Below, one piece after another: positions 14,839 to 64,000 of a DNA stretch of 64,000 nucleotides. The notes beneath the pieces are model-generated. The model was given only the letters and a program-made list of their open reading frames with translations. It ran no database searches and was not told the DNA's origin. Every line of letters starts with the position of its first letter. Positions within the stretch are counted from its first letter, which is position 1. The stretch is from the IMG/VR virus record IMGVR_UViG_3300045973_000169, positions 1 to 64,000 of that record; one strand, written 5' to 3'. Position numbers and translations under genes: made by a program.

Positions 14839-14841
14839 ACT

Positions 14842-15779: not shown

Positions 15780-15850
15780 CTGTAGTATCCGGCCAGATGG
15801 ACTCTACATCCATCTAAACTATCACTCTAACCAAACAAAGGAGAAACAAA

Positions 15851-16837: not shown

Positions 16838-17154
16838 TGGAAGAGACAGATCCTTGTACCCATTGTACACGCCCGTTCTGCTATGGGTGTGAATACCAAC
16901 TTAAAGGAGGTGATTAAAATGCCGTGGAGCTTGACCTACTTCTTCTTGTGTAGGCATTGTCACTATATGGATGAGATTCCTGCTCATTCATTGCCTGTAC
17001 ATGATGGTTGTCCCAAGTGTGGGGCAATCGGCTTCAGGAGACAGGTGCTTGAGGATGATCAGTTGGTTGATTTCAATCCTAAGAAGCATGTGAAGTAAAC
17101 AAACGTTCTGAGCAGGACGTTAAAAGGCTCATACTTAAATAGAGGAGATATATC

Positions 17155-20247: not shown

Positions 20248-20769
20248 TATTGTCTCGTAGTATAATGGTTTGGTAGTAATATCCTTAAAACTACCAATAT
20301 ATTAGGAGGTAAGTATGTCAGACAGAATGTTTAAGCACGATATTTGTTTGCCAATAGGTGATTGCGATGATGATATAGGTGATTTCTTTAGTACTCTTGG
20401 CTGGGTTATTTATTTATCTATCCCAGCATTTGAAGGGATGGTTATCCAATTTGAGAATGGTGAACACTTAATGTTCTATGTTAAAGACATCATATACTCT
20501 TACTGGAAAAATACAGCTGTAATAACGCTAGTTAAATACAGAGGGAGTTGCTCCCCATACAAGAAAGGAGTATGATATGTCAAATAACTTACGTGAACGT
20601 TTTATTGAAACATATACGACATTATCTCTTTTAGTTAGAGAGTTTTATGGTGGTCGGCGTGTATCTAATAAAAGGAGGAAATCATGATTGAAGTTCACTT
20701 ATCGTTAATGGGGTGGTATTACGTTGTGATACCTATTTGTGCTAAAGTATCTGTTTATCTGATCTATTA

Positions 20770-21207
20770 ATGGAGGGTGATATGAGAAGGGGATATAAAC
20801 AACCTAAACTTGTTGATAAAGTTAAATCTCTTATTGAAGCAGATGCTATCTCATTAGATAGAGTTAGATGCTATGATAACTCTTTGGAGAGTATCCCAGC
20901 TAAAACAGGCAGGACATCCAGAACTCATGGGTTCGAACGTGTCATAATAGAGAGGAATCAGAAGCATCGTGTAAGGTTGAAGAAAGAAAAGAGAATGAAA
21001 GAGATATTTAAAAGGGGCAAGGAAGTCCTAGCAAAGCAAGGAAGTGATCACAACTGTATTAGGAGAGGTAAACGAACTTATAGTAAAGAAGAAGCTGATG
21101 TATATATTAAAGGTTACAAGCAAAAGAAACTTGGGAAATACTATTGTAAGAAGTGTAGAGGTTGGCATCTAACTTCTAAGCTGGAGGTGAGTAATGGTGA
21201 TACTTAG
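20770..21207 (+). CDS. Basic hypothetical protein with C-terminal YxCxxCxGWHLTS zinc motif
   Basis: The YYCKKCRGWHLTS motif is common in small phage proteins. Confidence 0.55.
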   Translation: MEGDMRRGYKQPKLVDKVKSLIEADAISLDRVRCYDNSLESIPAKTGRTSRTHGFERVIIERNQKHRVRLKKEKRMKEIFKRGKEVLAKQGSDHNCIRRGKRTYSKEEADVYIKGYKQKKLGKYYCKKCRGWHLTSKLEVSNGDT

Positions 21208-21714
21208 ATTCATATGGTTATCATTAATGGACCTATTCTTTCTATTCACTCAATTTAAATTAATAGGACTAATAGTATTCTTCCTATTGTTCTGTATTAT
21301 GTTCTACTTGAAGCGTAAATAGAATTTCATGGATTCTTCTGGAGTCATTCGAGAGAGTGGCTCCTAGAGAGTGCGCGAGCATTCTAACTGCAGTACACGT
21401 TACACCTGTTATACCTGTAGTTTACAAGTTACACCTGTTGTACCATAGTACCGTTTAACCGTTACACATTAGTAAATATACCGCTGCTCCAGTCCCCCTA
21501 AAGTCAAGGGCGTGGTGCTATTTGTTGTGTTGAGTTATTAAGTGAGTGATTGTGTTAGTTGTAGCATTGTAGACGTAAGTGTAGCATTTGTCCGAAGATG
21601 TCTTATCGTTGGTTAGTGTTCGTTCGTGGAGTCGTGTTAGTGTATGAAATTTTGAAATGGTGTTAGTGTTTGGCACCATTCAATAAAAAAAAACGTGTTA
21701 GGAAGGAGATTGTC

Positions 21715-22200
21715 ATGATTAAAAAGCGTTCCATGGTAGCAACTGTTGAGAGTCTCAAGACCGATTTCGTGAAGTTTGGTAGCAATGCTGCCATCCGCCA
21801 GATCGATATCAATCTTGGTGACCAGACCCGCATCCGCTGTAATGAAGGCGATGCACTGTTCGACTCTGTTGTAAAGTCCGTTCGCGGTGGCTGTACTCTG
21901 TCGTTCGACTATGCCGACATCCGTGAGGACAAGAAGACCGAGGCTTTGATTTCGGGCGGTACTGGTTCTGTTGGTTCCGGTTGGTTCACCGTGCATGGCG
22001 TCGAGATTACCGATGCGAAACCCGGCGAGATCAGCAAGTTGCTGGAAGAGCGTTTGGAAGCTGCTGCTGTTCCGCTGTCCTTCCCCGAGGCTCCGCGTGA
22101 AATCGTTACCGGTAAGACAAAGGGTGACATTGTTCCCGAGTACAAAGCTGGGGCACATGCTGAAGCCTCTGCTACTGGTGACACGGTTGAGAAGTTCTAG
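21715..22200 (+). CDS. Hypothetical protein, strongly codon-biased (likely highly expressed)
   Basis: AAGGAGA SD before ATG ~21715; GC-rich third codon positions. Confidence 0.65.
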   Translation: MIKKRSMVATVESLKTDFVKFGSNAAIRQIDINLGDQTRIRCNEGDALFDSVVKSVRGGCTLSFDYADIREDKKTEALISGGTGSVGSGWFTVHGVEITDAKPGEISKLLEERLEAAAVPLSFPEAPREIVTGKTKGDIVPEYKAGAHAEASATGDTVEKF

Positions 22201-23719
22201 CCTTTTGTGCTAGTGTACGATTTTGGTAGGGGTACCGAATCCCTGCAGAGGGATAGGATTGAGTTGCTAATCCCTATCAAACGGTAGAGGGGCCTCCATT
22301 GTTATGCATACAGTGGAGCCGAAAAGCCCCTCACCGTATTATTCTGTATCGAAGGAAGGAGAACTTAAACCAATGGTTATCGAAATTAAGAGTGACACCG
22401 TAGTCAGCTCAAATCGACCATGCCATGGATGTCGAAACTTCCAGTTTAGGAGAGTAACAACGGAAGAGACCGATCCTGAAGCTAGGATTGAGGCGCAACA
22501 ACTTACAAAAGAAACCTGTTTAACTTGTGGTATCACTCGACCACGAACTTCTTTAAAGATTTATAGAGTGAAAAGTCCACCTGAACGTCGAAAACAAGAA
22601 AGGGGATGATATTTTGAAAAACTTCTTTAAAAAAGTATTCAAGTATGGGTCCCTCTTTATTATGGGATATGCATTACACATACTTGTAGAGGCATTTGTT
22701 GTAACGAATATACTTGCTATGTTCGGGATGCATATTCCCGTTCTAGTATAAGGGGGTGAACTTATGATCCATCCCATACTTCTGGCTTTCATTTCTATGA
22801 TTGTTGGGAGTGTTGCACTCGTTATTACATTCGCTACAGGTCGTTGGTTCTTTAGGAACTTTATTGATCCACCCAACATGGAACTTGTTCGTGAGTTTAA
22901 CTCTTGTGTTGAAACTATAACTCGAGAACATCAACGTGGGAAACAACTCTATCGTAAATTCGGTACTGCTGAAATGAGAATCGCACAAAAGAATTGGGGT
23001 GCTGAAACACTTAGCACTTTCAAGTGAGGTGGTATATCATGCTCATGGTATTCTATGTTGGATTCGGAACTGGCATATTGTTTTATATCATTAAACTTGT
23101 CATGTTCTTTATTAGTACCCGTGGTTGGTTAAACTGGCTATGGAGATTAGCTCATCGTAATGGATTAGCTTTATTCATATTCGACTTTATATTCGGATTG
23201 ATAATCTCTAGTGCCATACACACTGCTGGAGCCGAAGGGTTAACTACCCTATTTGTATTTATCGGCTTCACTGTAAGCTCATGTTTTTACGTTATCACAC
23301 ACCTTAGTTGTCGAAAGGGAAAGGAGTTAGCATGCGCATTTGGCCGTTCGTATTAATGATGACAATGTGCATACTCTTCTTTGGTGTAATGTTCTTTGCA
23401 TTCTATAAGTTTATCATCCTCTTAATCGGGGCTGCTTGCTTTGCATGTGCAATGTTCGTAACACTTAAGGTCTGTATCCCATTTGTCAATTGGTGCTATG
23501 GTTTGAAACACAGAATTAAAGATTGTACTGGTAGATAGCGTTCGCGGACTGCCATCCTGAGAGATAGAGACTCTAAGTGCCAACTCAAAAAGGCATGTAC
23601 AGTTTCTTTGGCTGATATACGTGAACATACGCTAAATGATCCTATATTACGACTCTTGCCTGACTGGTCATCGGGTAAAAGCATATTTAGAGGATTAGTT
23701 CTACCAGTGCATTAAATAA

Positions 23720-23806
23720 GCCTCTATGGTGGAATTGGTAGACACAAGGGACTTAAAATCCCTCGACAGTAATGTCGTCCCAGTTCGACTCTGGGTAGGG
23801 GCACCA
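23720..23806 (+). tRNA. tRNA-Leu(TAA)
   Basis: GCCTCTA/TAGGGGC acceptor stem, D-loop GG, anticodon loop CTTAAAA, long variable arm, GTTCGAC T-loop, CCA end. Confidence 0.93.
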
Positions 23807-28684: not shown

Positions 28685-28978
28685 TTAGTCATCTTATATA
28701 GGAAACATAGGATTGCAGTATAAAGATCTTGTCTAATTTGATTAGCGGTGTGATGGCCGAAGGGTAAGATGTGGAAGAGAGCGATACTCTCCTATGAGGG
28801 CTTATATATTATTAGACAATATACATCATTAGGATTCCTGTAATTTGATCAATTGTGGGGCCTAGACAAACATATATGGATGTAGAGCGATATGCTCGTA
28901 GCTTAGGCTATTAGACAGCATGCAGATACCGTATATGGACTAACTCTGTCTTAGAGAATTGGTGACATAAACTCTAAG
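28685..28978 (+). ncRNA. Putative structured non-coding RNA
   Basis: ORF-free; nested helices TTAGTC/GACTAA and TTGTCTAAT/ATTAGACAA, two GAGCGATA-containing hairpins, GU-rich hairpin at 28830-28864. Confidence 0.5.
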
Positions 28979-30826: not shown

Positions 30827-30911
30827 GGGGTTGTAGCGGATCGGCCTTCTAAGCCGTGCACATAACACCGTAATGGATCGCATGCTGGTTCGAATCCAGT
30901 CAGCCCCTCCA
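30827..30911 (+). tRNA. Atypical D-armless tRNA-Arg(TCT)-like RNA
   Basis: GGGGTTG/CAGCCCC acceptor stem, CGGC-CTTCTAA-GCCG anticodon arm, GCTGG-TTCGAAT-CCAGT T arm, CCA. No D arm; long variable region. Confidence 0.7.
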
Positions 30912-31322: not shown

Positions 31323-31397
31323 GGGTCTCTCTTCCAGTGTGCAGGAAGATCCGCTCATAACGGATTAAGTAGAGTTCGATTCTCTAGGGACCCACCA
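31323..31397 (+). tRNA. tRNA with CAT anticodon (Met or Ile2)
   Basis: GGGTCTC/GGGACCC acceptor, ATCCG-CTCATAA-CGGAT, TAGAG-TTCGATT-CTCTA, ACCA. Confidence 0.85.
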
Positions 31398-35123: not shown

Positions 35124-35463
35124 TATCCTTGGCTATACGAAAACGATTAATAAAGATACCTTCTCATAATAGGTTAATTATGAACTTCGACTTGATATCG
35201 GATCATAATTTTGACTGTCTAATACACATGATAAATTATATTTAAGCGCGTAGCGCTCATCTAAAAGCTCAGGTACATCAGGAGTTAGGTTACAAGAATC
35301 ATTTAAACTGCGTAGAAGCCTTTCGTGGGTGGAGCGGGATTCAAGTCTTTTTAGTTCAAGATATAAGACTTATGTTTACATGATTCGATAAAACCCATGA
35401 ATTATTTTATAAGCATTTATCTTTTAAGCTTTTCGTTTGTACATGGCTGTATAGCCAGGGATA
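35124..35463 (+). ncRNA. Putative ~340-nt structured RNA
   Basis: Closing 15-bp helix TATCCTTGGCTATAC/GTATAGCCAGGGATA (one G-U), inner helix GAAAA..TTAATAAAGATA/TATCTTTTAA..TTTTC; ORF-free. Confidence 0.7.
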
Positions 35464-35600: not shown

Positions 35601-36977
35601 ATGGCTGCAAAATATACATTAACAGAAAATGGGGCTAAGACCCTATCCGATAGTGGCAATCCTTTAGTGAATTTGTTTTTTACTATTGGGTCTGCTCGTA
35701 ATAACCCTGAAGTAACAAGAGCTAACTTTAAGAAAGCTTTTGAGTTTGATGCATTGAGAGCTTCTGCTATAGTTCTTTGTGCTCGTGATATTCGTCATAA
35801 TGGTATGGGCGAACGTCAGATCTTTCGTACGCTTCTTAAAGACATGGCTGGTAGTGGTAAGATCTATACTCAGAAGATAGTTGAGCTTATCCCTGAGATT
35901 GGCCGTTTTGATGACCTCAAAGCAGTTGAAGGTACTGTTTATGAGAAGATGGCTATTGATATCTTTGCTAAGGCTATCCGTGAGCGTAATGTTCTTGCTG
36001 CTAAATGGGCAAAGCGTGAAGATAAGAAACTTCAGTTAGCTTTAGGGCTGAATGAAGCTGGACTCCGTAAGCTCTTAGCATCAATTCGCAAAGAGCATAT
36101 CGTTGAGGCCAAGATGTGTCTTAAGGACTGGAAATCTATCGAGTATGGTAAAATTCCTTCAGTTGCTGGTACACGTTATTCAAAAGCATTTCATAAGAAT
36201 GATGGTATTCGTTATCGTGCTTTCATTGATAACCCTGATACTAAGGTGAATGCATCTGCTTCTTTCCCTTATGATGTATATCGTATGTGGAGTAGCAGAA
36301 CTTGTCAGCCTCCTGAGATTAACAAGTATTGGAATAATCTGAAAGAGCTTGAGCTTTCAGGTAGTGTCCTTGCTATTGTTGATACATCAGATTCTATGAC
36401 TTGGTTTAAGGTTGCTGGTAGCCTTGTTCCAAGGGATATTGCTGTATCATTGGGCGTCTACTGTGCTCAGAAGATTGAGGGTAAGTTCAAGAATAATATG
36501 ATGACCTTCAATTCTAACCCTGAGTTCTTTACATTGCCTACAGGTGATGTATGTCAGGCATTTGATAAGGTAATGAGATCCAATATTGGTGGCAGTACTA
36601 ACATTCAGAAAGCTTATGAGAAGATTCTTTCCATGGCTCAGACTGTTAATGCTACTGATAAGGATATGCCTAAGTTCATCCTTATTATATCTGATATGCA
36701 GTTTAATGGCTGCACAGATAGACCTTCTGATACTGTCTATGACAATATGAGAAAGAAATATAAGGCTGCTGGATTCACTATGCCTAAAGTGATATTCTGG
36801 AATATGGATGCTCGTCATGATCAGTATCCTACTGCTTCATTTCAGAAAGAAACTGCTTTAATTAGTGGTTTTAGTCCTAATATTCTCAAGGCAGTTCTTA
36901 AGGGGCAAGATGTTGTTATCACCCCTGAAGGAATAATGAATGAGGCAATTGCTCCATTCATTGAGATGTTAAAATAG
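35601..36977 (+). CDS. DUF2828-family helical + vWA (MIDAS) protein, Ro60/TROVE-like by inference
   Basis: TENGA, RDIR..G.GER..FR, G..DDL, LAAKW..RE, MIDAS DTSDS, ISDMQF, VIFWN, SGFSP. Confidence 0.8.
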   Translation: MAAKYTLTENGAKTLSDSGNPLVNLFFTIGSARNNPEVTRANFKKAFEFDALRASAIVLCARDIRHNGMGERQIFRTLLKDMAGSGKIYTQKIVELIPEIGRFDDLKAVEGTVYEKMAIDIFAKAIRERNVLAAKWAKREDKKLQLALGLNEAGLRKLLASIRKEHIVEAKMCLKDWKSIEYGKIPSVAGTRYSKAFHKNDGIRYRAFIDNPDTKVNASASFPYDVYRMWSSRTCQPPEINKYWNNLKELELSGSVLAIVDTSDSMTWFKVAGSLVPRDIAVSLGVYCAQKIEGKFKNNMMTFNSNPEFFTLPTGDVCQAFDKVMRSNIGGSTNIQKAYEKILSMAQTVNATDKDMPKFILIISDMQFNGCTDRPSDTVYDNMRKKYKAAGFTMPKVIFWNMDARHDQYPTASFQKETALISGFSPNILKAVLKGQDVVITPEGIMNEAIAPFIEMLK

Positions 36978-42156: not shown

Positions 42157-42622
42157 ATTTTATGGTAAGAGTAAACCTTTCTTTGAAGGTAGTAACTTTT
42201 ATCCTGCAAAATTTAAAGATAGTGCTGGTACTATATGGGATACAACTGAACATTATTTTCAGGCTATGAAGTTTGAAGCTGGATCTGAAATTCAAATTGG
42301 ACCAGAAAGCTTTATCCCAATTCGTAAGCATATACATGATCAGCCTACTCCTATGAAAGCAGCAAACGAAGGACGTAGGAGAGATTTTCCACTCCGTAGT
42401 GATTGGGAACAAGTAAAAGACCAAATGATGTATAATGCATTACGTTATAAGTTTACACAGAATCCAGTATGTAAACAGGCTCTTCTTGATACTGGTGATG
42501 CTGAGTTAATTGAAGCTTCTCCTGTTGATTATTACTGGGCAGAAGGTGCAGATGGTACAGGCAAGAATATGCTTGGTAAACTGTTAGTTAAATTACGAGA
42601 GGAGATCAGAAATGAACAATAA
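42140..42622 (+). CDS. NADAR (YbiA-like) protein
   Basis: SNFY, TEHYFQAMKF, R.DW..VK..M...L..KF.QN, LIEASP.D.YW, G.N.LG. Confidence 0.9.
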   Translation: MENVIRFYGKSKPFFEGSNFYPAKFKDSAGTIWDTTEHYFQAMKFEAGSEIQIGPESFIPIRKHIHDQPTPMKAANEGRRRDFPLRSDWEQVKDQMMYNALRYKFTQNPVCKQALLDTGDAELIEASPVDYYWAEGADGTGKNMLGKLLVKLREEIRNEQ

Positions 42623-44261
42623 GTTATTAGCTGTATTAGCATGTGATGGATATAAGATTGGTCATAAAGATCAAGATGCTCCTGGCGTTGAAAATAAGTA
42701 TTATACATGGACTCCTCGTTCAAACAAATATCTTCCTGAAGTTGAGAAGGTAGTTGTCTTTGGTGTTCAAGGTTTTATTAAGATTCATCTTCTTCAGTTC
42801 TTCAATGAGAACTTCTTTGAATTAGATAAAGAGTATGTTGTCTTTGAATACAAGCGTATTCTTAAATCATACTTGTTCAAAGAGGAGATTGATACAACTC
42901 ATATTGAGGAACTGCATGACTTAGGTTACTTGCCTTTAAAGATTAAAGCTATTAAAGAAGGGATAAGAGTCCCAATCAGAACTCCTGTTTTAACTGTTGA
43001 GGTTACTAATGGGAAATTTGCATGGTTGGGTGGATATATTGAAGATATTCTTTCTACTTCTCTTTGGCAGCCAATGACTGTTGCTTCTATTGCTTATGAG
43101 TATAAGAAACTCTTTAAAGAGTTTGCAATGGAAACTGTAGGAAATACTGAATTCTGTAAGTTCCAAGGTCATGACTTTAGTTATCGTGGCTTGATGGCTG
43201 GTCTTGATGCTATTCAGGCTTCAGGTTCAGCTTGGTTACCTTTGTTTGTTGGAACAGATAATATTCCATCTATTCCTTATATGGAAAATGTCTATGGAGC
43301 TGATAGCTCTAAAGAGATTATTGGGTGTAGTGTACCTGCTTCTGAACACAGTGTAGCTGAGACCTATATGGAATTTGATGATGATGGCAATCTTATCCCT
43401 GGTTGGGAAGATGAATATCTCCGTAGATTGATTGTTGATATTTATCCTACTGGGATTGTTTCAATTGTAGCAGATACAATTGATCTCTTTGAGCTTATTA
43501 CTGTTAAGTTAGTTGCTCTTAAAGAAATCATTATGGCTCGTGATGGTAAGACTGTCATTCGTCCTGATAGTGGCAACCCTGCTGATATCCTTTGTGGATA
43601 TGTTATTAAGAAATTAAATAACCCACTTAATGGTGATGCTGATAAGTACTATCTTCCTTTTGATCGTTGGACTGATGATGGATTTAATGCTTACCAGACT
43701 ACTGATGGAAAAGTTTATAACTTTGATCATAAAGAATTATCTATTGCTGAAACTAAAGGTGTAGTTGAACTTCTTTGGGAGATCTTTGGTGGAACTATCA
43801 ATGCCAAAGGATACAAAGAATTAGACTCACACATTGGTACTATCTATGGTGATTCTATTACTATTTCTTTAGCTAGAGAGATCTGTAAAAGACTTAAAGC
43901 TAAAGGCTTTGCTAGTACTAACTGGGTTGCTGGTGTTGGTAGTTACAGCTTGTTAGGACAGTTAAGTCGTGATAGTCTTGGATTTGCACTTAAAGAGACC
44001 TCTATTACTAGAAATGGTAAAGAGATAGCTGTCTTTAAGGATCCTAAGACTGATGATGGAACTAAGAAATCAGCTAAAGGACGTGTAGTAGTTGTACCTT
44101 CTCCTATTGGTGATGGTTCAATGCGTACTATTGATAACCTTACCAAAGAACAGGAAGAAAAGGTTGGAGCTTTCAACTTACTCCAGACTGTATTTGAAGA
44201 TGGTGTATTGCCTGCAGAAACAACATTAGCAGATATTCGTATTTGTTTAGGTGGAATTTAA
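42612..44261 (+). CDS. Nicotinamide phosphoribosyltransferase-like (probable Namat, NARP1)
   Basis: DGYK.GH, HDFSYRG, SVPASEHSV, SIVADT, IRPDSG, IYGDSIT, KDPKTD...KKSAKG. Confidence 0.9.
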   Translation: MNNKLLAVLACDGYKIGHKDQDAPGVENKYYTWTPRSNKYLPEVEKVVVFGVQGFIKIHLLQFFNENFFELDKEYVVFEYKRILKSYLFKEEIDTTHIEELHDLGYLPLKIKAIKEGIRVPIRTPVLTVEVTNGKFAWLGGYIEDILSTSLWQPMTVASIAYEYKKLFKEFAMETVGNTEFCKFQGHDFSYRGLMAGLDAIQASGSAWLPLFVGTDNIPSIPYMENVYGADSSKEIIGCSVPASEHSVAETYMEFDDDGNLIPGWEDEYLRRLIVDIYPTGIVSIVADTIDLFELITVKLVALKEIIMARDGKTVIRPDSGNPADILCGYVIKKLNNPLNGDADKYYLPFDRWTDDGFNAYQTTDGKVYNFDHKELSIAETKGVVELLWEIFGGTINAKGYKELDSHIGTIYGDSITISLAREICKRLKAKGFASTNWVAGVGSYSLLGQLSRDSLGFALKETSITRNGKEIAVFKDPKTDDGTKKSAKGRVVVVPSPIGDGSMRTIDNLTKEQEEKVGAFNLLQTVFEDGVLPAETTLADIRICLGGI

Positions 44262-51429: not shown

Positions 51430-52167
51430 ATGATAGGTGAAAAGTTTGGTAAGTTAACAGTTGTCTATTTCAATGATTTAAATAAGAGAAAAGAGAAACT
51501 ATGGTTATGTCTTTGTGATTGTGGAAAAGAAATAATTGTAAAAACAAGAAATCTTAAAATTGGAGCAACAAAAAGTTGTGGTTGTTTATCAACAGGCCCA
51601 AAAATTTCTGATCTTACTGGGAATAAATTTGGTGATTTAGAAGTTATATCTTATGCACATCAAGATAAATGGAGAACAAGTTTTTGGAATTGTAGATGTA
51701 TTTGTGGTAATTATACTGTTGCTAGTTCCGCAAATCTTAAATCTGGAAATCGTATTTCTTGTGGATGTAAACATGATGAATGGAAACATAATAAACCAAA
51801 AGGTCAAGATAGTCCACATTGGAATTCAGATATAATTGATAGAAATAGCAGACGACTTGACTATGAAGCAAAAGACTGGGCAATAAGAATTAAAGAACGT
51901 GATAAATATAAGTGTTTAGTTTGTGGTAAATCTCCAAGTGGAGAACTAACAAGTCATCATCTATATAGCTATAATGACTATATAGATTTAAGATATGATA
52001 TTGATAATGGAATTACTTTATGCGAGCAATGTCATTATTCTTTCCATAAAAAATATGGATTCAAAAAGAACACAAAAGAACAATTTAAGGAGTGGAAAAA
52101 TGAGTTATATGGCAGTAATAGCACGGTTGAAGAATGTCCGTGCTCATCCGAATGCAGACCGGATTAA
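51430..52167 (+). CDS. HNH homing endonuclease (paralog of 8141-8854)
   Basis: WLCLCDCG..KSCGC and WNCRCICG..SCGC; RDKYKCLVCG..SHH..NGITLCEQCH. Confidence 0.88.
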   Translation: MIGEKFGKLTVVYFNDLNKRKEKLWLCLCDCGKEIIVKTRNLKIGATKSCGCLSTGPKISDLTGNKFGDLEVISYAHQDKWRTSFWNCRCICGNYTVASSANLKSGNRISCGCKHDEWKHNKPKGQDSPHWNSDIIDRNSRRLDYEAKDWAIRIKERDKYKCLVCGKSPSGELTSHHLYSYNDYIDLRYDIDNGITLCEQCHYSFHKKYGFKKNTKEQFKEWKNELYGSNSTVEECPCSSECRPD

Positions 52168-53470
52168 ATTAGCTAATTGTTTAGGCTATCAAGTTATTGT
52201 AGGGCTTGAGGCTAAAGATGATGATATTGTTATTTTATTTCCTGATGATGGGCAATTAAGTCATGAATATATTTTTAATAATAACCTATATAACAAAGCA
52301 GAGATGAATAAAGATCCTAGTGTTAAAACTGGATTCTTTGATCATAAACGTAGAGTAAGATGTCAGACATTTAGAGGAGAGAAAAGTGAAGCTTATACTG
52401 CTGATATCAGAAGCGTGGAATTTACTGGGGTTGATATTGAAAGTCTCTATGTGGGTGTCCGTTTTGATGTTCTTAATGATATTAGCATTTGCAATAAGTA
52501 TATAACTCAAGCCACTAAGGATGCTGCTAATAAGAATGGGAATAAAGATAAGGTTAAACTTAATGTTATTCTTAAGAAAATGTTCCCTGAGCATATAGAT
52601 ACTGAACAGATTAGATTTGCAAGAGATGAAGATCTAATTGGATTAGTTACTATTACTCATAAGCTTCATGGTACAAGTGCTAGAACTGGATATATTAATA
52701 CTCCTGTTGAAGTACCTTTAAAATGGTATCATAAACTTTGGAATCAGTATGTTAAGTTAGTTGACTATCTCCCTCCTAAGTATACTCACGAGCAGAATGA
52801 AGCTTTATATTTTGCTCCTACTACTATCAAGAAATGGAAAACTATTTTTGGTACACGTAGGGTAATTAAAGGTCCTGTTAATGAAGAAGCAACTGATTAT
52901 CGTTCTTTATGTGCTAAACGATTAGCTCCTTTTATTGAAAAGGGTGAAATCTGGTATTATGAAATTGTAGGGTATGAAGATACTGGTGCTCTTATTATGG
53001 GGAGTGTTTCTACTAAAGAAATGCCTAAAGAATTCCAAAAAAGGTTTGGTGAAACTATTACTTACAAGTATGGTTGCTTACCTGGGACATGGAATATTTA
53101 TGTTTATCGTATTACTCATCAGAATGAAGATGGTGTTATCTATGAACTTCCATGGGCACAAGTAAAAGCTAAATGTAATAATGCTGCTATTAAGCATGTT
53201 CCTGAAATTGATGTTATTTTAACAGAAGTAGCTTTAGATGGTACAATTGATGTTGAAGTTTTAAAGCAAACAATTGAACATTACACTGAAGATGAAGATA
53301 TTGCTGAACCCCTTGATGCTTCTCATATACGTGAAGGTATCTGTGTTAGGATTGATAATCTTGAGACTGGTAAAATGAAAATATTCAAGAATAAAACTTT
53401 TGTATTTAAGGTGCTTGAAGGTATTGTTAAGGATTCTGGTGTAGTTGATACAGAAGAAGCTGAAGGGTAG
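52100..53470 (+). CDS. RNA ligase, Rnl2/DRB0094-like, with N-terminal tRNA-binding OB-like domain
   Basis: HPNADR, motif I KLHGTS, YEIVG, REGICV, K.K.F.F; AAGGAG SD before ATG 52100. Confidence 0.85.
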   Translation: MSYMAVIARLKNVRAHPNADRIKLANCLGYQVIVGLEAKDDDIVILFPDDGQLSHEYIFNNNLYNKAEMNKDPSVKTGFFDHKRRVRCQTFRGEKSEAYTADIRSVEFTGVDIESLYVGVRFDVLNDISICNKYITQATKDAANKNGNKDKVKLNVILKKMFPEHIDTEQIRFARDEDLIGLVTITHKLHGTSARTGYINTPVEVPLKWYHKLWNQYVKLVDYLPPKYTHEQNEALYFAPTTIKKWKTIFGTRRVIKGPVNEEATDYRSLCAKRLAPFIEKGEIWYYEIVGYEDTGALIMGSVSTKEMPKEFQKRFGETITYKYGCLPGTWNIYVYRITHQNEDGVIYELPWAQVKAKCNNAAIKHVPEIDVILTEVALDGTIDVEVLKQTIEHYTEDEDIAEPLDASHIREGICVRIDNLETGKMKIFKNKTFVFKVLEGIVKDSGVVDTEEAEG

Positions 53471-55948: not shown

Positions 55949-57169
55949 ATGTTTAGATCTTTAAATGATAAAGCCTACTTAGTTGGAGGCGCAGTACGTG
56001 ATCTCCTATTAGGCCATGAACCTAAAGATCGAGATTATGTTATTGAATGTACAGAAGCTGAATTTGAGAGAGTATTTCCCGATGCTGAAAAGGTCGGGAA
56101 TACTTTCCCTGTTTATTTACATCCTGAGACTGGTGATGAGATAGCTTTAACAAGAACAGAAAGACCAACAGAAACTAAATTTGGTGCTCTTGGTTCATAC
56201 CAAGGATTTGAAATTATTGGAGTTGGAGTGTCTATTCTTGATGATCTTAGAAGAAGAGATTTTACTATTAACTCTATTGCTCAAAAATATCTTACGAAAG
56301 AAATCATTGATCCTACTAATGGTAAGTTTGATTTAAAAAATAAGATGTTACGCTGTGTTAATTCTGAAGCTTTTAATGATGACCCTTTAAGAATCTATAG
56401 AGCTTGTAGATTTGCTGCTAGATTTGATTTTAAAGTTGAGATGCATACATTTAAATTAATGAGAGACAATTGTCATAATCTTTTCTTTGTAGAAAAAGAA
56501 AGAGTAGTTAATGAATTAAAGAAAATGTATTCTCAGACTGATAAGCCAGGTATATTCTTTAGGTTATTATTTGAGCTTGGTGGTATGGCACATCATTTTG
56601 ATCCTATTTTAGACCTTACTGTTATCCCTGCTGGACCTAAACAATACCATGGTACTAATACTGGGTTTGATCATACAATGGAAGTGATAGATAGATGTAA
56701 GGCTAATGGATTAAGCTTTGATTGTTTTATAGCTTGTCTATTCCATGATACAGGTAAAGCTTCAACTGATCCTTCTATATTACCTCACCATTATGGGCAT
56801 GAAAATGGGTCTTATCGTATTAATAAAGAGTTCTTTGCTGAGAATAGGTTTGATGCTAGTACGGTAGATTTAGCTTTAACTGTAGGGAAGAATCATATGA
56901 AGACTCATGTTATAACTAAGATGAGGACTAATAAAGTAGTTGATTTTCTTAGAGGAATTAGAAGATTAGATGAGTTTATTGATTGTTGTAATTGTGATCA
57001 TCCTTTTACTGATAATACTTTAGATTATATCAATCTTTTCAAACAAGTAAGAAAAGAAACTGTTGTTGAAATTCCTAAAGAAACAAAAGATAAATATGAA
57101 TTTGTTGGTAGGTTATACACTAAAGCCCTTGGGCAAAAGATAAAGGAATTTAAAGAAAATGGCAAATGA
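55949..57169 (+). CDS. cca: tRNA nucleotidyltransferase (CCA-adding class II) with HD domain
   Basis: VGGAVRD, DRD, DL.RRDFTIN, DDPLR..R..RFAARF, ERV..E, HDTGK. Confidence 0.9.
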   Translation: MFRSLNDKAYLVGGAVRDLLLGHEPKDRDYVIECTEAEFERVFPDAEKVGNTFPVYLHPETGDEIALTRTERPTETKFGALGSYQGFEIIGVGVSILDDLRRRDFTINSIAQKYLTKEIIDPTNGKFDLKNKMLRCVNSEAFNDDPLRIYRACRFAARFDFKVEMHTFKLMRDNCHNLFFVEKERVVNELKKMYSQTDKPGIFFRLLFELGGMAHHFDPILDLTVIPAGPKQYHGTNTGFDHTMEVIDRCKANGLSFDCFIACLFHDTGKASTDPSILPHHYGHENGSYRINKEFFAENRFDASTVDLALTVGKNHMKTHVITKMRTNKVVDFLRGIRRLDEFIDCCNCDHPFTDNTLDYINLFKQVRKETVVEIPKETKDKYEFVGRLYTKALGQKIKEFKENGK

Positions 57170-57563: not shown

Positions 57564-57927
57564 AACGTTTGAGAGAAGGTTTTACTTTTACACAAGACCA
57601 ATCAATAGGTATGACTTGTAGAGTAGAAAATAATGAAGTTGTCCTTATCCCTTATATAAGAGAGACTGGACAACTTCTATTTAGATGGATGGCAGAATAT
57701 GAAATTAAATAAAATAAAAGAATCAGGGATCTATTTAGTTATAGGACCACCTGAATGTGTTTCTTTGTTACCTACTGAAAATATATTATTTCTTTATCCT
57801 AATGGTGATCTTGTTATGGAAGGTAATAATTATATGGATTGTTTAAATGATGGTGAAGATGAGATAATTGAAGTTATCTGTCTTGCTAAATCAGAGAACC
57901 ATCCATCTTTGAGAGAAGGTGTTTTTG

Positions 57928-59061
57928 ATGAGTGATGTTAACAAATGGTTAACTCAAAATACTATATTTAAAGGTGTGTTAGGGTCTAGGGCTTATGGTA
58001 TCCATAATGCTGATAGTGATTATGACTATAGAGCTGTAGCTATTGCTCCTAAACAATATTATCTTGGATTAGATAATTTTGAACAACAGGAAACTAAAAA
58101 TCCTGATTCGACAGTTTTTGATATACAAAAATTTACAAAACTTGCTTTAGAATGTAATCCTAATATTATTGAGTATTTATTTCTCCATCCAGAGAATATT
58201 CTTATCAATACTCCTTATTGGGATATATTAGTTGAGAATAGAGATATATTCCTAAGCAAGAGAGCTAAACATAGATATCTAGGATATGCTTATTCTCAAC
58301 TTAAAAGAGTCCAATCTCATAAGCAATGGTTGCTTAATCCTGTAGACCATAAACCTACCCGTGAGGAGTACGGATTGCCTGCTACAGAGTCTTTGAATAG
58401 AGAACTAATAGGACAGATAGAGTTAGTGACTAAAGACTGTTTAAAAGAGAATTTAGACGTTATACTTAATAGTTCTGCAGATGAGTTAACTATTACTGGA
58501 TTAAGAAACTATTTAGAGTTTGATGTAAGAGGTGCTCTTGATGAAGCTTTTGCTGATTTTGTTTATCCTACTATATTTAACTTATTAATTAATAAGATAG
58601 ATGTAATGTCAACTCTTGCAATAGATAATTTCTCAGAAGAGATTGTAGCTGTATATACTAAAGAGAAGTCTTATTCTTCTGCTATGAGTAGATGGAAACA
58701 ATACCAGAATTGGGTTGATACAAGAAACCCTGCTAGAGCTGAACTTGAAGCTAAGTTTGGATATGATACAAAACATATAGGACATGTATTTAGGCTCCTT
58801 AAGCAAGGACAAGAAATCCTGTTGGATAAAACATTAACTGTTAAATTAAAACCAGAGGATAAAGAAGAGATTCTTGCTATTAAAGCTGGTAAATTTACAT
58901 ATGATGAAATAATAGATTTAGCTTCTATGAGGATGGCTTTCTTTGAAGAGTTATATGAGAGATCTACTCTCCCACATAGTCCAGATTTTAATAAAGCAAA
59001 TACATTGCTAGTAAAAACAATAGAAAAATTTTATGAGGATAAAAATGAAACAAATTGTTAA
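57928..59061 (+). CDS. Pol-beta superfamily nucleotidyltransferase (YcgL/RlaP-like)
   Basis: GSRAYG....SDYD.R, NPNIIE.L, GYA..Q, GYDTK...H..RLL. Confidence 0.82.
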   Translation: MSDVNKWLTQNTIFKGVLGSRAYGIHNADSDYDYRAVAIAPKQYYLGLDNFEQQETKNPDSTVFDIQKFTKLALECNPNIIEYLFLHPENILINTPYWDILVENRDIFLSKRAKHRYLGYAYSQLKRVQSHKQWLLNPVDHKPTREEYGLPATESLNRELIGQIELVTKDCLKENLDVILNSSADELTITGLRNYLEFDVRGALDEAFADFVYPTIFNLLINKIDVMSTLAIDNFSEEIVAVYTKEKSYSSAMSRWKQYQNWVDTRNPARAELEAKFGYDTKHIGHVFRLLKQGQEILLDKTLTVKLKPEDKEEILAIKAGKFTYDEIIDLASMRMAFFEELYERSTLPHSPDFNKANTLLVKTIEKFYEDKNETNC

Positions 59062-61231: not shown

Positions 61232-61765
61232 AATCCTTTCCTAGGCCCCATCCTGTAACACTATCCCTCAAAAATAGTGTTATGGTTTGGGGTCTAAATA
61301 ATTTTTGGAGAAACAAATGTTAAACTTAGATAAAAAGAATTTCTATAATGCAGGTTTAAATAAACAATATACAAAGGTTTATAAAGTTGTAACTGTAATT
61401 AAAGATGTAATGCTTAGTATGAATGCTCAAAGAGAAAATTATGGTACTATAATCCCTTCTGTAATGAAAATAAAGTATGAGTATGGTAAAGTATCATATC
61501 CTAAAGTTGGTAAATTGTTCTGTTTCCCTGATTATCAATCAGCAAAAAAATGGTGTGATAAAATGACTGATGGAATAATTATAGTAGGGAAAGGAACTAA
61601 TGTTGAAGAATGTGAGATCTCATATCTTTTAGGAGAAAGAGGATTCAGGCATGTTGAAAGATTTTGGAGTACAAAGAATAAATCAACTATCTCTGAAGCT
61701 ATTTGGCACGTCCCTACAAAAACTTATACTTGTGATTCTTTCACTCCACTTAGGAGAGTAATAGG

Positions 61766-62194
61766 ATGCTAATAGATCAAATCAGAGCAGATAGAATTGT
61801 TGCATTTAAAAACAAAGAAAATATCAAGAAAAACTTACTAGGCTGTCTAATTGGGGATGCCTGTAAGATTGATAAAGAGCCTACTGATGCTTTTGTACTA
61901 TCTATTATTAAGAAGTTTATTGATGGTGCTAAGATTGTAATTGAAAATGCTAAAGATACTGATTATGAGTTCTATCAAGCTAACCAGGAGATTGATATTC
62001 TCGAAACTTATCGTCCTAAACAATTGACTGAAGATGATATTAGGGGTAAAATTTATAGGCTTATAACTGCTGGGTCTATTGAACAGCCTAACCTTCTTAA
62101 TCTTGGTGATATTATGAAATATTTTAAAACTAATTTTGAAGGTCAATATGATGGTGCATTAGTATCTAAATTAGCTAAAAAGATGCTAGTATGA
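61766..62194 (+). CDS. GatB/YqeY domain protein
   Basis: I..D...AFK, E..ILE.Y.PKQL.E, G.IMK......G.YDG..VS. Confidence 0.8.
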   Translation: MLIDQIRADRIVAFKNKENIKKNLLGCLIGDACKIDKEPTDAFVLSIIKKFIDGAKIVIENAKDTDYEFYQANQEIDILETYRPKQLTEDDIRGKIYRLITAGSIEQPNLLNLGDIMKYFKTNFEGQYDGALVSKLAKKMLV

Positions 62195-63160
62195 TTTATA
62201 TAATTGTATGGAATATAGTTCTAACATGTGCTGTTGGAGTACTTCTATATAAGGAACTTACACGAAAAAGTATTGAGGTAGAGTAATATGTATCCACCAG
62301 ATTATAATACTGGTGATGATGATATGGCTCCAGATGATAGAGGTAAAGTAGGAATGGGTGAATTTGCTGATATGGCTATTGATTCTATTATCAATGGCCC
62401 TTATGGTATGTGGTCTCCTAGTTATAATTCGAGATATAATTCAAGCTATAGTAGACCTAAAAAGAGAATTTCATGTAATAAGTGTAATTCTACTATGGTT
62501 TATTGGGAACAACTTTCTAGTGGAAGATGGTGCCTATATGATAGTGTTACTGATAAACCACATGTATGTCGTAAAGGTGATAATAAGAAAGATATAATTA
62601 AACATAGACAAATTTACAGTTGTTTTAATTGTATCTATATTAATCATAAAGATAAGAGTTGTGATGAACATAACTTTATAACTACTTATGATTCTATATG
62701 TAATGATTATGAAAGTAGTATATGACTGATGGTAAATTTTTTAATCCTTTCTCTATCAAACTTATGCTAATAATAGGGATTGTTTTAACTGTATGTTGGC
62801 TAGCAGAAAGTGAACCTAAGAAGAAAGATCCACAACAGACTATTGTAATAAAAAATTATATATATCCTAAAGATATTGTATACAAAAATGTGAGTACAAA
62901 ATGAAAAATGCTTTTGAAATATATAGTGATGCAGAGAAACTTGAAGAACAACTTAAACCATTTCAATACTTTATGGCTGGATGTGGGATAACTGGTTTTG
63001 CGAGTGCTTTTTTAGCAATAATATGGTCTCCATTTGTTTATGGGGTATTTGGTTTGTTTTTAGCTGGTATTATTGCTGGGTTTCTTGTCCAATACGAAAA
63101 TAAAATTGGGCGATGGAAAAGAGAAGCTATTAGACTCTATGGTAGAGATGAAGAGGAGTA

Positions 63161-63925
63161 TTGGTAATGCTTGATCTTACTGATAAAAGATCCTTTTATA
63201 ATATATATCCTATTAAGAAGGCTAATGGTAAGATTAGGATTATACATGCTCCTAAAAAAGAACTTAAAGATGAACAGAAAAAGCTTGCAGATGCATTAGA
63301 AAAATGGTATAATCCTCCTGATTGTGTATTCGGTTTTATCAAAGGTAAATCTCCTAAAGACTTAGCTCAACATCATATTAATAAAGATTGGATTGTTACT
63401 CTCGATATTAAAGATTTCTTTCCAAGTATAACTAAAGCTCTGTTAAAAGAGTTATTAAGATTAGATGACTATTGGATAGAAGTTGCAACTTATGAAGATA
63501 AACTTATACAAGGTAGTCCAGCGAGTCCTATATTAAGTAATCTTGTAATGCTATGGCAGGATAAGTTCTTTGAAATGTATGCTTTTGTAAATGGGTATAC
63601 TTATAGTAGATATGCAGATGATTTAGTGTTATCAGGGATGGGTAAGCCTAAATGGGATTATATCAATTATATAGAGAGCCATTTAAATGGATTAGGTTTT
63701 AGATTGAATAAATCTAAGATTAAATTTATGTTTAAGAATCAAGAGCAAAGAGTTCTTGGTATTACAGTAAATGATAAGGTTAGTCTAAACCATAAAGTTA
63801 GAAAGAAGCTTAAAAATACGATTAAATATAATCCTATGAGCAATGTATTACAAGGCTATATGGCTTATGTTAATAGTATCAATAAAGATCAATTTAATAA
63901 AATAAAAGAACAAACAAAAGGGTAA
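63161..63925 (+). CDS. Retron-like reverse transcriptase (compact, 254 aa)
   Basis: IKK.NG..R.I.AP...LK..Q, GF.KGKS, LAQHH (NAxxH-like), LDIKDFFPSI, QGSPASP.LSN, YSRYADDL, LN..K, VLG (VTG-like). Confidence 0.88.
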   Translation: MVMLDLTDKRSFYNIYPIKKANGKIRIIHAPKKELKDEQKKLADALEKWYNPPDCVFGFIKGKSPKDLAQHHINKDWIVTLDIKDFFPSITKALLKELLRLDDYWIEVATYEDKLIQGSPASPILSNLVMLWQDKFFEMYAFVNGYTYSRYADDLVLSGMGKPKWDYINYIESHLNGLGFRLNKSKIKFMFKNQEQRVLGITVNDKVSLNHKVRKKLKNTIKYNPMSNVLQGYMAYVNSINKDQFNKIKEQTKG

Positions 63926-64000
63926 CAAATGGAAGGCAATATTGAACCTATTGGTCTTTATAATCCGGAAATTGTAGATGCTAAACTATTAAAATATATC

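What the first reader, a model, noticed from the sequence alone, without database searches (positions are those of the whole stretch)
63161..63925. Orphan compact retron-like RT in a lytic-type phage accessory region
Seen: YADD RT with retron-like region X (LAQHH) and region Y (VLG), a very short thumb, and no non-coding space upstream; it overlaps a two-TM small gene. Known: retron RTs need an msr-msd RNA and usually serve defence. Inference: either it uses a distant RNA in trans (candidates 35124-35463, 28685-28978, 61242-61296) or it is a decoy or anti-retron factor. Its partner may lie beyond the window.
Basis: partly seen in the sequence, partly recalled or inferred. Interest (0 to 1): 0.65.

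Follow-up and report, generated by a model that had tools for sequence, protein, structure and literature searches.

The report
Phage retron-like reverse transcriptase module
A 207-kb uncultured pond phage carries an intact, unusually small retron-type reverse transcriptase; in about twenty related phages this gene travels with a Gad2-like nucleotidyltransferase gene and a conserved structured RNA, so these phages appear to use retron machinery themselves, for a purpose not yet known.

Summary
The ORF is real. It most likely starts at ATG 63167 and encodes 252 aa, an intact retron-lineage RT with YADD, an xAxxH motif and VLG. All 13 best PDB fold matches are retron RTs. It is not a lone orphan. 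It belongs to a tight clade of about 22 compact RTs (239-261 aa, 46-57% identity) found on large AT-rich phage contigs syntenic with this complete, circular 206.6-kb genome. The nearest outside relatives are 337-aa type III-A retron RTs.

Two partners emerged, both lying partly or wholly beyond the window.
- The next gene (63929-64807) is a Gad2-family nucleotidyltransferase with a CCA-adding-enzyme-like fold. It is the next gene downstream of the RT in 10 of 12 informative contexts.
- A structured RNA starts 7-14 nt after the RT stop codon in relatives. In this genome it sits 14 kb downstream (77,734-78,188). A covariance model built from this copy alone finds the RT-adjacent copy in a relative (E 0.007), and 22 of 28 base pairs show compensatory changes. 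Its GC-rich middle is crowded with 6-bp palindromes, which I cannot explain.

No a1/a2 repeats were identified by eye (no dedicated scan was run), and there is no cDNA evidence. I file it as a new variant of a retron-type system, probably working for the phage.

The parts
63167..63925 (+). Compact retron-type reverse transcriptase gene (252 aa, P0001). The stop codon is at 63923-63925. An alternative TTG start lies at 63161.
   Evidence: RVT_1 scores 1e-21. PADLOC RT_III-A scores 6e-54, but RT_X, RT-TIR_XII and RT_XIII are within 11 bits. NCBIfam retron_St85_RT scores 170 bits, below its cutoff of 235. All 13 best PDB fold matches are retron RTs. The motif A Asp (D80), QGSP and YADD are intact.

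A fourth part cannot be listed because it lies outside the window. The candidate cognate structured RNA is on the + strand at 77,734-78,188 of the same contig, whose numbering continues from the window (= L001:17734-18188). Its 5' helices are at 77,809-77,932, its GC-rich palindrome-rich domain at 77,864-78,162 and its terminal hairpin at 78,116-78,163.
62901..63167 (+). Upstream 88-aa ORF with a long hydrophobic stretch fitting two TM helices. Its stop overlaps the RT start (TAATG). It is context only, not a conserved partner.
   Evidence: No homologue was found next to the RT in any relative. The upstream genes in relatives differ (a radical SAM gene, a 94-aa soluble protein, the SLT gene, and others).
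63929..64000 (+). Start of the Gad2-family nucleotidyltransferase gene (292 aa). It runs to 64807 in the genome, so the window end cuts it. It begins 3 nt after the RT stop.
   Evidence: Orthologues carry a precomputed Pfam PF26128 (Gad2) hit, and the protein is 47% identical to the L002 orthologue. GGK, DxD and a third Asp are invariant. Foldseek best matches are CCA-adding enzymes, bacterial poly(A) polymerase and TENT5 (E 3e-6 to 1e-3).

Best explanation
Shown:
- The ORF encodes a catalytically intact retron-lineage RT. It belongs to a phage-specific compact clade whose nearest outside relatives are type III-A retron RTs.
- It is the first gene of a conserved cassette, RT followed by a Gad2-family nucleotidyltransferase with a CCA-adding-enzyme-like fold.
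- A conserved structured RNA gene of about 250-450 nt accompanies the cassette on the same strand. In several relatives it begins 7-14 nt after the RT stop codon, effectively as the 3' UTR of the RT mRNA. In two others it lies just upstream of the RT. In this genome and its closest syntenic relative it has moved about 12-14 kb downstream, next to an Hc1 gene.

Inferred:
- The RT binds the conserved 5' helices of this RNA and copies part of the variable GC-rich domain into a small cDNA, as a retron RT copies msd. In this genome it must do so in trans.
- The nucleotidyltransferase acts on a 3' end of that RNA or cDNA by tailing, repair or primer making.
- The product serves the phage in its conflict with host immunity (counter-defence) rather than killing the host cell as bacterial retrons do.
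For: RT identity:
- Retron HMMs score 130-181 bits, against 66 for group II, 47 for Drt2 and 33 for Drt3.
- The best PDB sequence matches are the retron RTs Ec86, Ec67 and Kva2. The top 13 fold matches are all retron RTs.
- D80, QGSP, YADD, H70 and LG are conserved.

Clade:
- 21 relatives share 46-57% identity. Scores then drop from 189 to 148 bits at the first 337-aa RTs.
- Four of the six outside RTs checked with PADLOC match the type III-A model at full length, 430-470 bits.

Cassette:
- The Gad2-like gene is the next gene downstream in G000, L002, L004, L006, L007, L008, L087, L088, L089 and L171. That is 10 of 12 informative contexts, often with 0-12 nt spacing or overlap.
- Its nucleotidyltransferase catalytic motifs are invariant and its fold is CCA-adding or poly(A)-polymerase-like.

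RNA:
- GC-rich palindrome-rich islands directly flank the RT in L006, L007, L090, L172, L173/L174 and L008.
- Each of three phage records has one dominant palindrome hotspot. It is RT-adjacent in G001 and G002, although in G001 the margin is small (6 palindromes against 5 in the next window).
- A model built from the G000 copy alone finds L331 (E 3e-11) and the RT-adjacent L006 element (E 0.007).
- A model built without G000 finds G000 again at E 5e-12.
- 95.9% of cells are paired, against 32-52% when partners are slid, and 22 of 28 pairs have compensatory changes.

Setting: the surrounding genes are RNA-repair, NAD-salvage and other accessory genes. They include NAMPT, an RNA ligase, a CCA-adding enzyme, a second nucleotidyltransferase (PHROG 388) and E1/E2/JAB genes.
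Against: - There is no evidence that any cDNA is made. The only public run holding this DNA is the source metagenome, kept as contigs.
- I could not identify the retron hallmarks in the RNA, meaning terminal a1/a2 inverted repeats and a branching G. I looked by eye only; no dedicated scan was run.
- The RNA usually lies downstream of the RT, not upstream as in retrons.
- In G000 the RNA is unlinked. In L004, L087 and L089 none was found within 6 kb.
- All relatives are syntenic phages, so adjacency could partly reflect inheritance rather than function. No RT-less relative was available as a control.
- The model matches to L090 and L171 are weak (E about 1-4 in the large searches). The covariation count was made on an alignment fitted to the model.
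- Three clade members have YADN or FADN.
- The complex prediction for RT with the nucleotidyltransferase gave no answer.
- The counter-defence direction rests on context and on the Gad2 family name only.
Confidence: 0.4

Rival explanations
1. The RT, the Gad2-like nucleotidyltransferase and the structured RNA are three independent accessory features. They sit together only because these phages share an inherited gene order. The RT would then work alone or on a host RNA, and the RNA would be an unrelated phage small RNA.
For: All contexts come from one syntenic phage lineage. In G000 and L331 the RNA is 12-14 kb away, beside an Hc1 gene. L172 and the P0002 contig lack the nucleotidyltransferase directly downstream. 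The complex prediction gave no support.
Against: The RNA is found on either side of the RT in different relatives, always on the same strand and within 7-360 nt, while the other upstream genes vary freely. RT-nucleotidyltransferase spacing of 0-12 nt or overlap suggests co-translation.
Confidence: 0.25
2. It is a classical retron-style defence cassette carried by the phage to exclude competing phages. The RT plus RNA-derived msDNA would hold a toxic effector in check, and a rival infection would release it.
For: Every characterised retron is a defence system, and the RT lineage is sister to type III-A retrons. Phages and satellites are known to carry defence systems. Retron-type RTs occur in P2-like and other phages.
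Against: The conserved neighbour belongs to an anti-defence family (Gad2, read in 10.1101/2023.05.01.538930) and has an RNA-end nucleotidyltransferase fold, not a known retron effector fold. No PADLOC effector model matches any neighbour. The only toxin-like candidate, the 2-TM ORF, is unique to this genome.
Confidence: 0.15
3. It is a catalysis-independent decoy or anti-retron factor. The compact RT would bind host retron RNA, msDNA or effectors and keep them silent.
For: Three clade members carry YADN or FADN in place of YADD yet are otherwise conserved. The protein lacks the N- and C-terminal extensions of type III-A RTs.
Against: 19 of 22 members keep all catalytic residues. A cognate conserved RNA exists in the phage itself. 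The host and its retrons are unknown.
Confidence: 0.1
4. It is a selfish retroelement. The RT ORF plus its structured 3' UTR would form a mobile unit, like a retroplasmid or a non-LTR element, that copies its own transcript.
For: In L006, L090 and L171 the RNA begins 7-14 nt after the RT stop, so RT and RNA would share a transcript. The RNA's genomic position varies between relatives.
Against: RT and RNA are single copy per genome. The RT keeps a fixed syntenic position between the SLT gene and the E2/JAB/ThiF genes. No target-site duplications or extra copies were seen.
Confidence: 0.05

Closest known systems
Type III-A retron reverse transcriptases (PADLOC model PDLC02946; bacterial RT + msr-msd + PRTase-like effector)
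   Same: This is the best-scoring PADLOC model for P0001, P0009 and P0021. The nearest outside relatives (337 aa, up to 39% identity) are full-length type III-A RTs. The RT motifs, the xAxxH motif and the V(T/L)G motif are shared.
   Different: The clade covers only model positions 56-280 of 330 and scores 161-181 bits against 430-470 bits. RT_X, RT-TIR_XII and RT_XIII score almost as well. The gene is in a large lytic-type phage. There is no upstream msr-msd and no PRTase or DNA-binding effector. The partner is a nucleotidyltransferase.
Retron Ec86 (Eco1) RT-msDNA complex (PDB 7v9u, 7v9x)
   Same: It is the best PDB sequence match (141 bits, profile positions 11-246 against residues 48-300) and a close fold match (TM-score 0.80) that includes the thumb helices.
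   Different: Identity is about 24-25%. Ec86 has about 37 more N-terminal residues and an upstream msr-msd with a1/a2 repeats. Its effector is a nucleoside deoxyribosyltransferase-like protein (from my own knowledge of that system).
Gad2, the anti-Gabija protein of SPbeta-like Bacillus phages (10.1101/2023.05.01.538930)
   Same: Orthologues of the downstream gene carry the Pfam Gad2 family hit PF26128. Both are phage proteins predicted to be nucleotidyltransferases.
   Different: Gad2 is about 400 aa, against 267-331 aa here. tblastn found no match in isolated phages. Gad2 is not reported with an RT or an RNA. Anti-Gabija activity was not tested here, and the RNA holds no GajA-type motif.
Viral retron-like RT clades from a global metagenome survey (RTC3 and RTC5; PMC13681634)
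   Same: That survey records retron-like RTs in viral contigs and speculates that they interfere with host defence.
   Different: It describes no partner gene, no RNA and no mechanism. I could not check whether this compact clade is among its clusters.
RTs that start on the structured 3' end of their own transcript (Mauriceville retroplasmid, non-LTR elements); from my own knowledge, a lead only
   Same: The RT ORF is followed at once by a structured 3' region that ends in a conserved hairpin. A CCA-adding-like enzyme is encoded next door.
   Different: The RT belongs to the retron lineage, not those lineages. There is no evidence of mobility or of 3'-end priming.

Membership tests
Retron (RT + msr-msd ncRNA + effector) | The RT belongs to the retron RT lineage by sequence and by fold. 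| tested here: met
   Retron models and structures are clearly the best matches. However, the NCBIfam retron_St85_RT score of 170 bits is below its curated cutoff of 235.
Retron (RT + msr-msd ncRNA + effector) | Retron-specific RT motifs are present: (N)AxxH between motifs 2a and 3, and VTG in motif 7. | tested here: met
   The motifs are LAQHH (H70 invariant) and VLG (L197 and G198 invariant, with Leu in place of Thr).
Retron (RT + msr-msd ncRNA + effector) | A contiguous msr-msd ncRNA gene lies immediately upstream of the RT on the same strand. | tested here: not met
   In this genome the upstream ORF overlaps the RT start, and a protein-coding gene follows 3 nt downstream.
Retron (RT + msr-msd ncRNA + effector) | A cognate structured ncRNA has terminal a1/a2 inverted repeats and a branching G. 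| tested here: inconclusive
   A conserved structured RNA linked to the RT in relatives was found. I could not identify a1/a2 repeats or a priming G by inspecting the folds. No dedicated scan for them was run.
Retron (RT + msr-msd ncRNA + effector) | The system produces msDNA, a branched RNA-DNA molecule. | not testable with these tools
   The only run holding this DNA is the source DNA run, kept as contigs.
Retron (RT + msr-msd ncRNA + effector) | An associated effector of a known retron type is present, and the system defends against phage. | tested here: not met
   No PADLOC effector model matches any neighbour. The conserved neighbour is a Gad2-family nucleotidyltransferase. Function was not tested.
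Type III-A retron | The RT matches the type III-A RT model at full length, and a PRTase-like effector with a DNA-binding partner is present. | tested here: not met
   The match is partial (model positions 56-280 of 330, 181 bits against more than 430 for true members). No PRTase was found.
Group II intron RT/maturase | The best match is to group II RT models, with maturase and intron RNA domains. | tested here: not met
   TIGR04416 scores 66 bits against a cutoff of 300. Rfam finds no intron. Fold matches are weaker (E 1e-11 against 1e-20).
Diversity-generating retroelement | Template and variable repeat pairs lie near the RT, and the RT is of DGR type. | tested here: not met
   There are no repeats longer than 39 nt or above 84% identity within 12 kb. 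The DGR RT fold match is weak (E 1e-8).
DRT / UG-Abi defence RTs (Drt2, Drt3, DRT9) | The protein matches the curated Drt models. | tested here: not met
   Drt2 scores 47 bits against a cutoff of 390, and Drt3a scores 33 against 200. Fold matches are weaker than to retron RTs.
Gad2 family (the neighbouring gene) | The protein matches Pfam PF26128 and has nucleotidyltransferase catalytic residues. | tested here: inconclusive
   The local Pfam copy appears to lack PF26128: orthologues that carry the precomputed hit gave no match when scanned. Membership therefore rests on precomputed hits to orthologues and on 47% identity to one of them. The catalytic motifs and the fold test are met. Anti-Gabija activity was not tested.

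The most novel reading that the evidence does not exclude
A lineage of large lytic-type phages has taken over a retron RT and turned it into a phage-side system. The RT copies a dedicated palindrome-rich structured RNA, with help from a CCA-adding-like (Gad2-family) nucleotidyltransferase that prepares or tails the RNA or cDNA end. The resulting small DNA or RNA-DNA molecule disarms or distracts a host nucleic-acid-targeting defence. This would be the first retron-derived counter-defence system and would give the Gad2 family a mechanistic context.
Probability: 0.15. Interest if true: 0.85.

Novelty: new variant of a known kind. Interest (0 to 1): 0.7.

Why it matters
Every retron studied so far is a bacterial defence system. 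Retron-like RTs in viruses have been counted in surveys, but I found no described partner or mechanism for them in the paper searches. This locus gives a concrete three-part hypothesis that can be tested: an RT, a cognate structured RNA and a Gad2-family nucleotidyltransferase, conserved across about 20 uncultured phages.

If the RT copies the RNA, three things follow:
- It would show what a phage does with retron machinery.
- It could explain how the Gad2-type anti-defence enzyme family works.
- It would provide a very small (252 aa) retron-type RT with a separable RNA that works in trans, which is of interest for retron-based DNA-writing tools.

If the three parts prove independent, the finding reduces to a new compact clade of phage RTs.

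Tried and rejected
- Near-identical DNA in isolated phages: none found. The terminase is only 27-28% identical to those of jumbo myophages.
- Rfam: no family matches the RNA or the RT surroundings. The gathering-threshold scan covered five loci. The E-value scan covered the element and 28.4-35.7 kb.
- Two palindrome-pattern scans of viral contigs returned almost only chance matches in GC-rich phages. Only the L008 contig was recovered.
- A search for relatives of the ORF that flanks the RNA found none in IMG/VR, so there is no RT-less comparison genome.
- A plain MAFFT alignment of the elements was uninformative. MAFFT plus RNAalifold on the G000 and L331 pair mis-registered the outer helix. 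I therefore used a covariance model built from one sequence plus a hand-written structure.
- Gabija-decoy idea: no TNNNCGGGNNA motif (recalled from memory as the GajA site) occurs in any element.
- Restriction-decoy idea: weakened. The genomic copy would itself be a target, and the element lacks the two palindromes the genome avoids most, GAGCTC and AGGCCT.
- 2-TM upstream ORF as a type-IV-like retron effector: rejected, because it is not conserved.
- Complex prediction for the RT with the Gad2-like protein: score 0.01, verdict 'no answer'. This is not evidence either way.
- Reads: the only holder is the probable source run, a pond metagenome kept as contigs. It shows no joints or extra forms and cannot report depth.
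Full report
**Setting.** The window is the first 64 kb of a single 206,638-bp contig with 33.8% GC. The contig's two ends repeat each other, so it is a complete circular assembly. It has a large terminase, tRNA genes and many RNA-repair and nucleotide-metabolism genes. It has no close DNA relative among isolated phages, and its terminase is only 27-28% identical to those of jumbo myophages. The only public run that holds it is a pond metagenome, probably its source.

**Observation.** The ORF 63161-63925 is real. The likelier start is ATG 63167, which overlaps the stop of the upstream ORF as TAATG and gives 252 aa. The protein matches Pfam RVT_1 (1e-21). It carries the motif A Asp (D80), QGSP, YADD (149-152), LAQHH (66-70) and VLG (196-198). 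The upstream 88-aa ORF has a long hydrophobic segment that fits two TM helices. The clade profile aligns to Ec86 RT residues 48-300 of 320, through the thumb helices. The AlphaFold model (pLDDT 94.1) superposes on retron RTs with TM-score 0.76-0.85. The protein is small because it lacks the N-terminal extension and the C-terminal tail. It covers positions 56-280 of the 330-position type III-A model.

**Which RT family.**
- Retron models dominate. PADLOC retron RT models score 130-181 bits and NCBIfam retron St85, TIR and Ec67 models score 138-170 bits. Group II scores 66 bits, Drt2 47 and Drt3a 33.
- The 13 best Foldseek PDB matches are all retron RTs (Eco7/Ec78, Eco2/Ec67, Ec86, Ec83). Group II, DRT2, DRT9 and DGR RTs follow at much weaker E-values.
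- No template/variable repeat pair lies within 12 kb, and no intron RNA is detected.
The RT does not cluster with group II or DGR RTs, and no canonical msr-msd lies just downstream.
- No single retron type wins. RT_III-A scores 181 bits, and RT_X, RT-TIR_XII and RT_XIII all score about 170. The NCBIfam St85 score is below its curated cutoff.

**A phage-specific compact clade.** The word-based protein search found 21 relatives of 239-261 aa at 46-57% identity. Scores then step down from 189 to 148 bits, where 337-aa RTs begin. Four of the six outside RTs checked (P0023, P0027, P0037, P0054) are full-length type III-A retron RTs at 430-470 bits on PDLC02946. Of the other two, one matched type XI and XII models best and one matched II-A best. 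The clade members lie on contigs of up to 167 kb. These contigs are syntenic with this genome in the order SLT, variable small genes, RT, Gad2-like gene, small ORF, Prok-E2_D, JAB, ThiF. Within the clade the catalytic residues are conserved in 19 of 22 members. P0009, P0012 and P0019 have YADN or FADN. A published survey has noted retron-like RT clades in viral contigs without describing partners or a mechanism (PMC13681634).

**Partner 1: the downstream gene.**
- The 292-aa ORF at 63929-64807 begins 3 nt after the RT stop and is cut by the window end.
- Its orthologues carry precomputed hits to Pfam PF26128 (Gad2), and it is 47% identical to the L002 orthologue.
- The local Pfam copy seems not to hold that model, so I could not score the G000 protein directly.
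- A homologue is the next gene downstream of the RT in 10 of 12 informative contexts. The spacing is 0-12 nt or an overlap in G000, L002, L004, L087 and L089. A short or long RNA element lies between the two genes in L006, L007, L088 and L171.
- The two exceptions are L172 and the P0002 contig, where a Gad2-family gene lies about 5 kb downstream.
- The alignment keeps GGK, DxD and a third Asp invariant, which is the polymerase-beta-type nucleotidyltransferase signature.
- The model's confident core (residues 30-240) matches class II CCA-adding enzymes, bacterial poly(A) polymerase and TENT5/FAM46. These enzymes add nucleotides to RNA 3' ends without a template (from my own knowledge of those families).
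- Gad2 itself is a phage anti-Gabija protein predicted to be a nucleotidyltransferase; the source I read reports no mechanism (10.1101/2023.05.01.538930).
- A complex prediction for the RT with this protein gave no answer.

**Partner 2: a structured RNA.** In L006, L007, L090 and L172 the DNA just after the RT is non-coding and GC-rich within AT-rich genomes. In L008 and L173/L174 a similar island lies just upstream of the RT. The orientation always matches the RT. G000 has nothing like this next to the RT. It has exactly one such island, at 77,864-78,162 (GC up to 71%), inside a 455-nt gap between an Hc1 histone-like gene and a 203-aa ORF on the + strand.
- That region folds far better than shuffled sequence (z -7) and has no Rfam match.
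- The closest syntenic relative, the L002/L331 phage, has a homologous element at the same Hc1 site. It shares an identical 21-nt hairpin segment and has covarying helices, but a much shorter GC-rich domain.
- The shared architecture has four parts: a P0 hairpin; a three-tier long hairpin; a GC-rich multi-hairpin domain of variable length; and a terminal hairpin closed by GUAU...AUAC (UAUAG...CUAUA in G000).
- A covariance model built only from the G000 5' domain (77,809-77,932), with a hand-written structure, found L331 at E 3e-11. It found the RT-adjacent element of L006 at E 0.007 in a search of 215 kb on both strands, starting 14 nt after the RT stop. It found the RT-adjacent element of L090 only weakly (E 4.3), starting 13 nt after the stop.
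- A second model built without G000 found G000 again at E 5e-12. It also found, weakly (E 1.3), a reduced element 7 nt after the RT stop in L171.
- On the resulting five-sequence alignment, 95.9% of cells are paired, against 32-52% when partners are slid by 1-3 columns. Compensatory changes occur in 22 of 28 pairs. That alignment was fitted to the model, so the count leans towards the structure.
- I therefore treat the 77.8-kb element as a homologue of the RT-adjacent RNAs, relocated in the G000/L331 sub-lineage.

**What is not shown.** By inspecting the folds I could not identify a1/a2 terminal repeats or a branching G, and I ran no dedicated scan for them. The RNA usually sits after the RT, not before it. 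L004, L087 and L089 show no element within 6 kb. No RT-less sister phage was available to test co-loss. No reads can show a cDNA. Membership in 'retron' is therefore met for the RT protein and its motifs. It is not met for the adjacent msr-msd or for a known effector type, and it is untestable for msDNA.

**The palindromes.**
- The G000 element holds 12 GC-rich 6-bp palindromes (GGATCC three times, CTGCAG twice, and CAGCTG, CTCGAG, GGGCCC, GCCGGC, GCTAGC, AGCGCT and GACGTC once each). Composition-matched shuffles give 3.4 +/- 1.8. It is the only such hotspot in the 206 kb.
- The same words recur in elements that cannot otherwise be aligned. GCTCGAGCTG occurs in four, CTGCAGCTG in four and TGGGATCCGG in three.
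- The rest of the genome strongly avoids some palindromes: GAGCTC 0 against 29 expected, AGGCCT 0 against 11, CAGCTG 4 against 30, and GGATCC 12 against 31. This looks like restriction avoidance.
- The element carries GGATCC and CAGCTG but not GAGCTC or AGGCCT. A cDNA acting as a restriction decoy is therefore possible but weakened.
- A Gabija-site decoy is not supported.
- I leave the palindromes unexplained. Other possibilities are pairing between molecules or a by-product of snap-back synthesis.

- 28685-28978 folds like shuffled sequence (z -0.6).
- 35124-35463 has a 15-bp terminal stem and z -3.2. It lies directly upstream of a vWA/DUF2828/DUF7788 protein that PHROGs calls an RNA-binding protein. 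No RT link was found for it.
- 61242-61296 is a 21-bp hairpin with z -6.9. It is conserved after the SLT gene in five relatives, with a CCCUCAA loop and an upstream AAUCCUUUCC motif. It is a separate small element, not an msr-msd.

**Mechanism and verdict.** My preferred reading, at confidence 0.4, has three steps, all inferred. The RT recognises the conserved 5' helices of its RNA and copies part of the variable GC-rich domain into a small cDNA, in trans in this genome. The nucleotidyltransferase acts on an RNA or cDNA 3' end. The product helps the phage against host immunity. The last step rests on the Gad2 family name and on a neighbourhood rich in RNA-repair, NAD-salvage and E1/E2/JAB genes. 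The rivals are:
- independent genes held together by synteny (0.25);
- a classical defence retron used against competing phages (0.15);
- a non-catalytic decoy (0.1);
- a selfish RT plus 3' UTR retroelement (0.05).

I rate the finding as a new variant of a known kind. The protein is a retron-type RT, but the host genome, the compact form, the RNA placement and the partner enzyme all differ from described retrons.

Noticed in passing
genome 66280-69756 (L001:6280-9756), just beyond the window: A phage-encoded ubiquitin-like conjugation set: Prok-E2_D (66280-67014), Prok-JAB (67014-67802) and a ThiF-type E1 (68629-69756). It is conserved downstream of the RT cassette in all relatives. More distant phage RTs (L010, L011, L021, L169; 28-33% identity) also sit beside JAB and ThiF genes.
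   Followed up: partly
window 35124-35463 and 35601-36977: A 340-nt non-coding region closed by a 15-bp terminal stem (fold z -3.2). It lies directly upstream of a 458-aa vWA/DUF2828/DUF7788 protein that PHROG 850 calls an RNA-binding protein. This may be a protein-RNA pair in the manner of Ro and Y RNA. It has no Rfam match.
   Followed up: partly
window 61232-61304: A 21-bp hairpin (z -6.9) after the SLT-like gene. It is conserved in L002, L006, L088 and L090, with covarying stems, an invariant CCCUCAA loop and an upstream AAUCCUUUCC motif. Both motifs look like anti-Shine-Dalgarno sequences.
   Followed up: partly
whole genome G000: Some 6-bp palindromes are strongly avoided: GAGCTC 0 observed against 29 expected (order-4 Markov), AGGCCT 0 against 11, CAGCTG 4 against 30, GGATCC 12 against 31, TGGCCA 1 against 9. 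This suggests the restriction systems of the unknown host.
   Followed up: no
clade alignment A1 (P0009 = L002/L331, P0012, P0019 = L087): Three otherwise well-conserved clade members have YADN or FADN instead of YADD. One of them (L331) has a much shortened GC-rich RNA domain, about 80 nt against about 190 nt.
   Followed up: partly
L004/L005:6783-7616: The Gad2-like reading frame is open from 2 nt after the RT stop for 278 codons, but has no ATG, GTG or TTG before about codon 126. The same holds in two independent samples. This points to an unusual start codon or coupling to RT translation.
   Followed up: no
window 42612-44261, 51995-53470, 55949-57169, 57919-59061: A run of NAD-salvage and RNA-end repair genes: NAMPT, an RNA ligase, a tRNA CCA-nucleotidyltransferase and a second nucleotidyltransferase (PHROG 388). 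A YqeY-like gene lies at 61766-62194. Together these look like a toolkit against NAD-depleting and tRNA-cleaving defences.
   Followed up: no
window 13800-22300: A block with GC well above the genome mean. It includes a 1030-aa ORF (17155-20247) with no PHROG or Pfam match and a GC-rich ORF around 21716-22260. It may have been acquired from another source.
   Followed up: no
window 30827-30908: Rfam calls a tRNA here (33 bits, above the gathering score) that ARAGORN did not list. ARAGORN lists tRNA-Leu(taa) at 23720-23806 and tRNA-Met(cat) at 31323-31397. GC-rich islands at 86-91 kb of the genome look like a larger tRNA cluster by eye; no tRNA scan was run there.
   Followed up: no
genome 1-20 and 206619-206638: The last 20 or so bases of the contig repeat its first bases, so the assembly closes on itself and the genome is complete.
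   Followed up: yes
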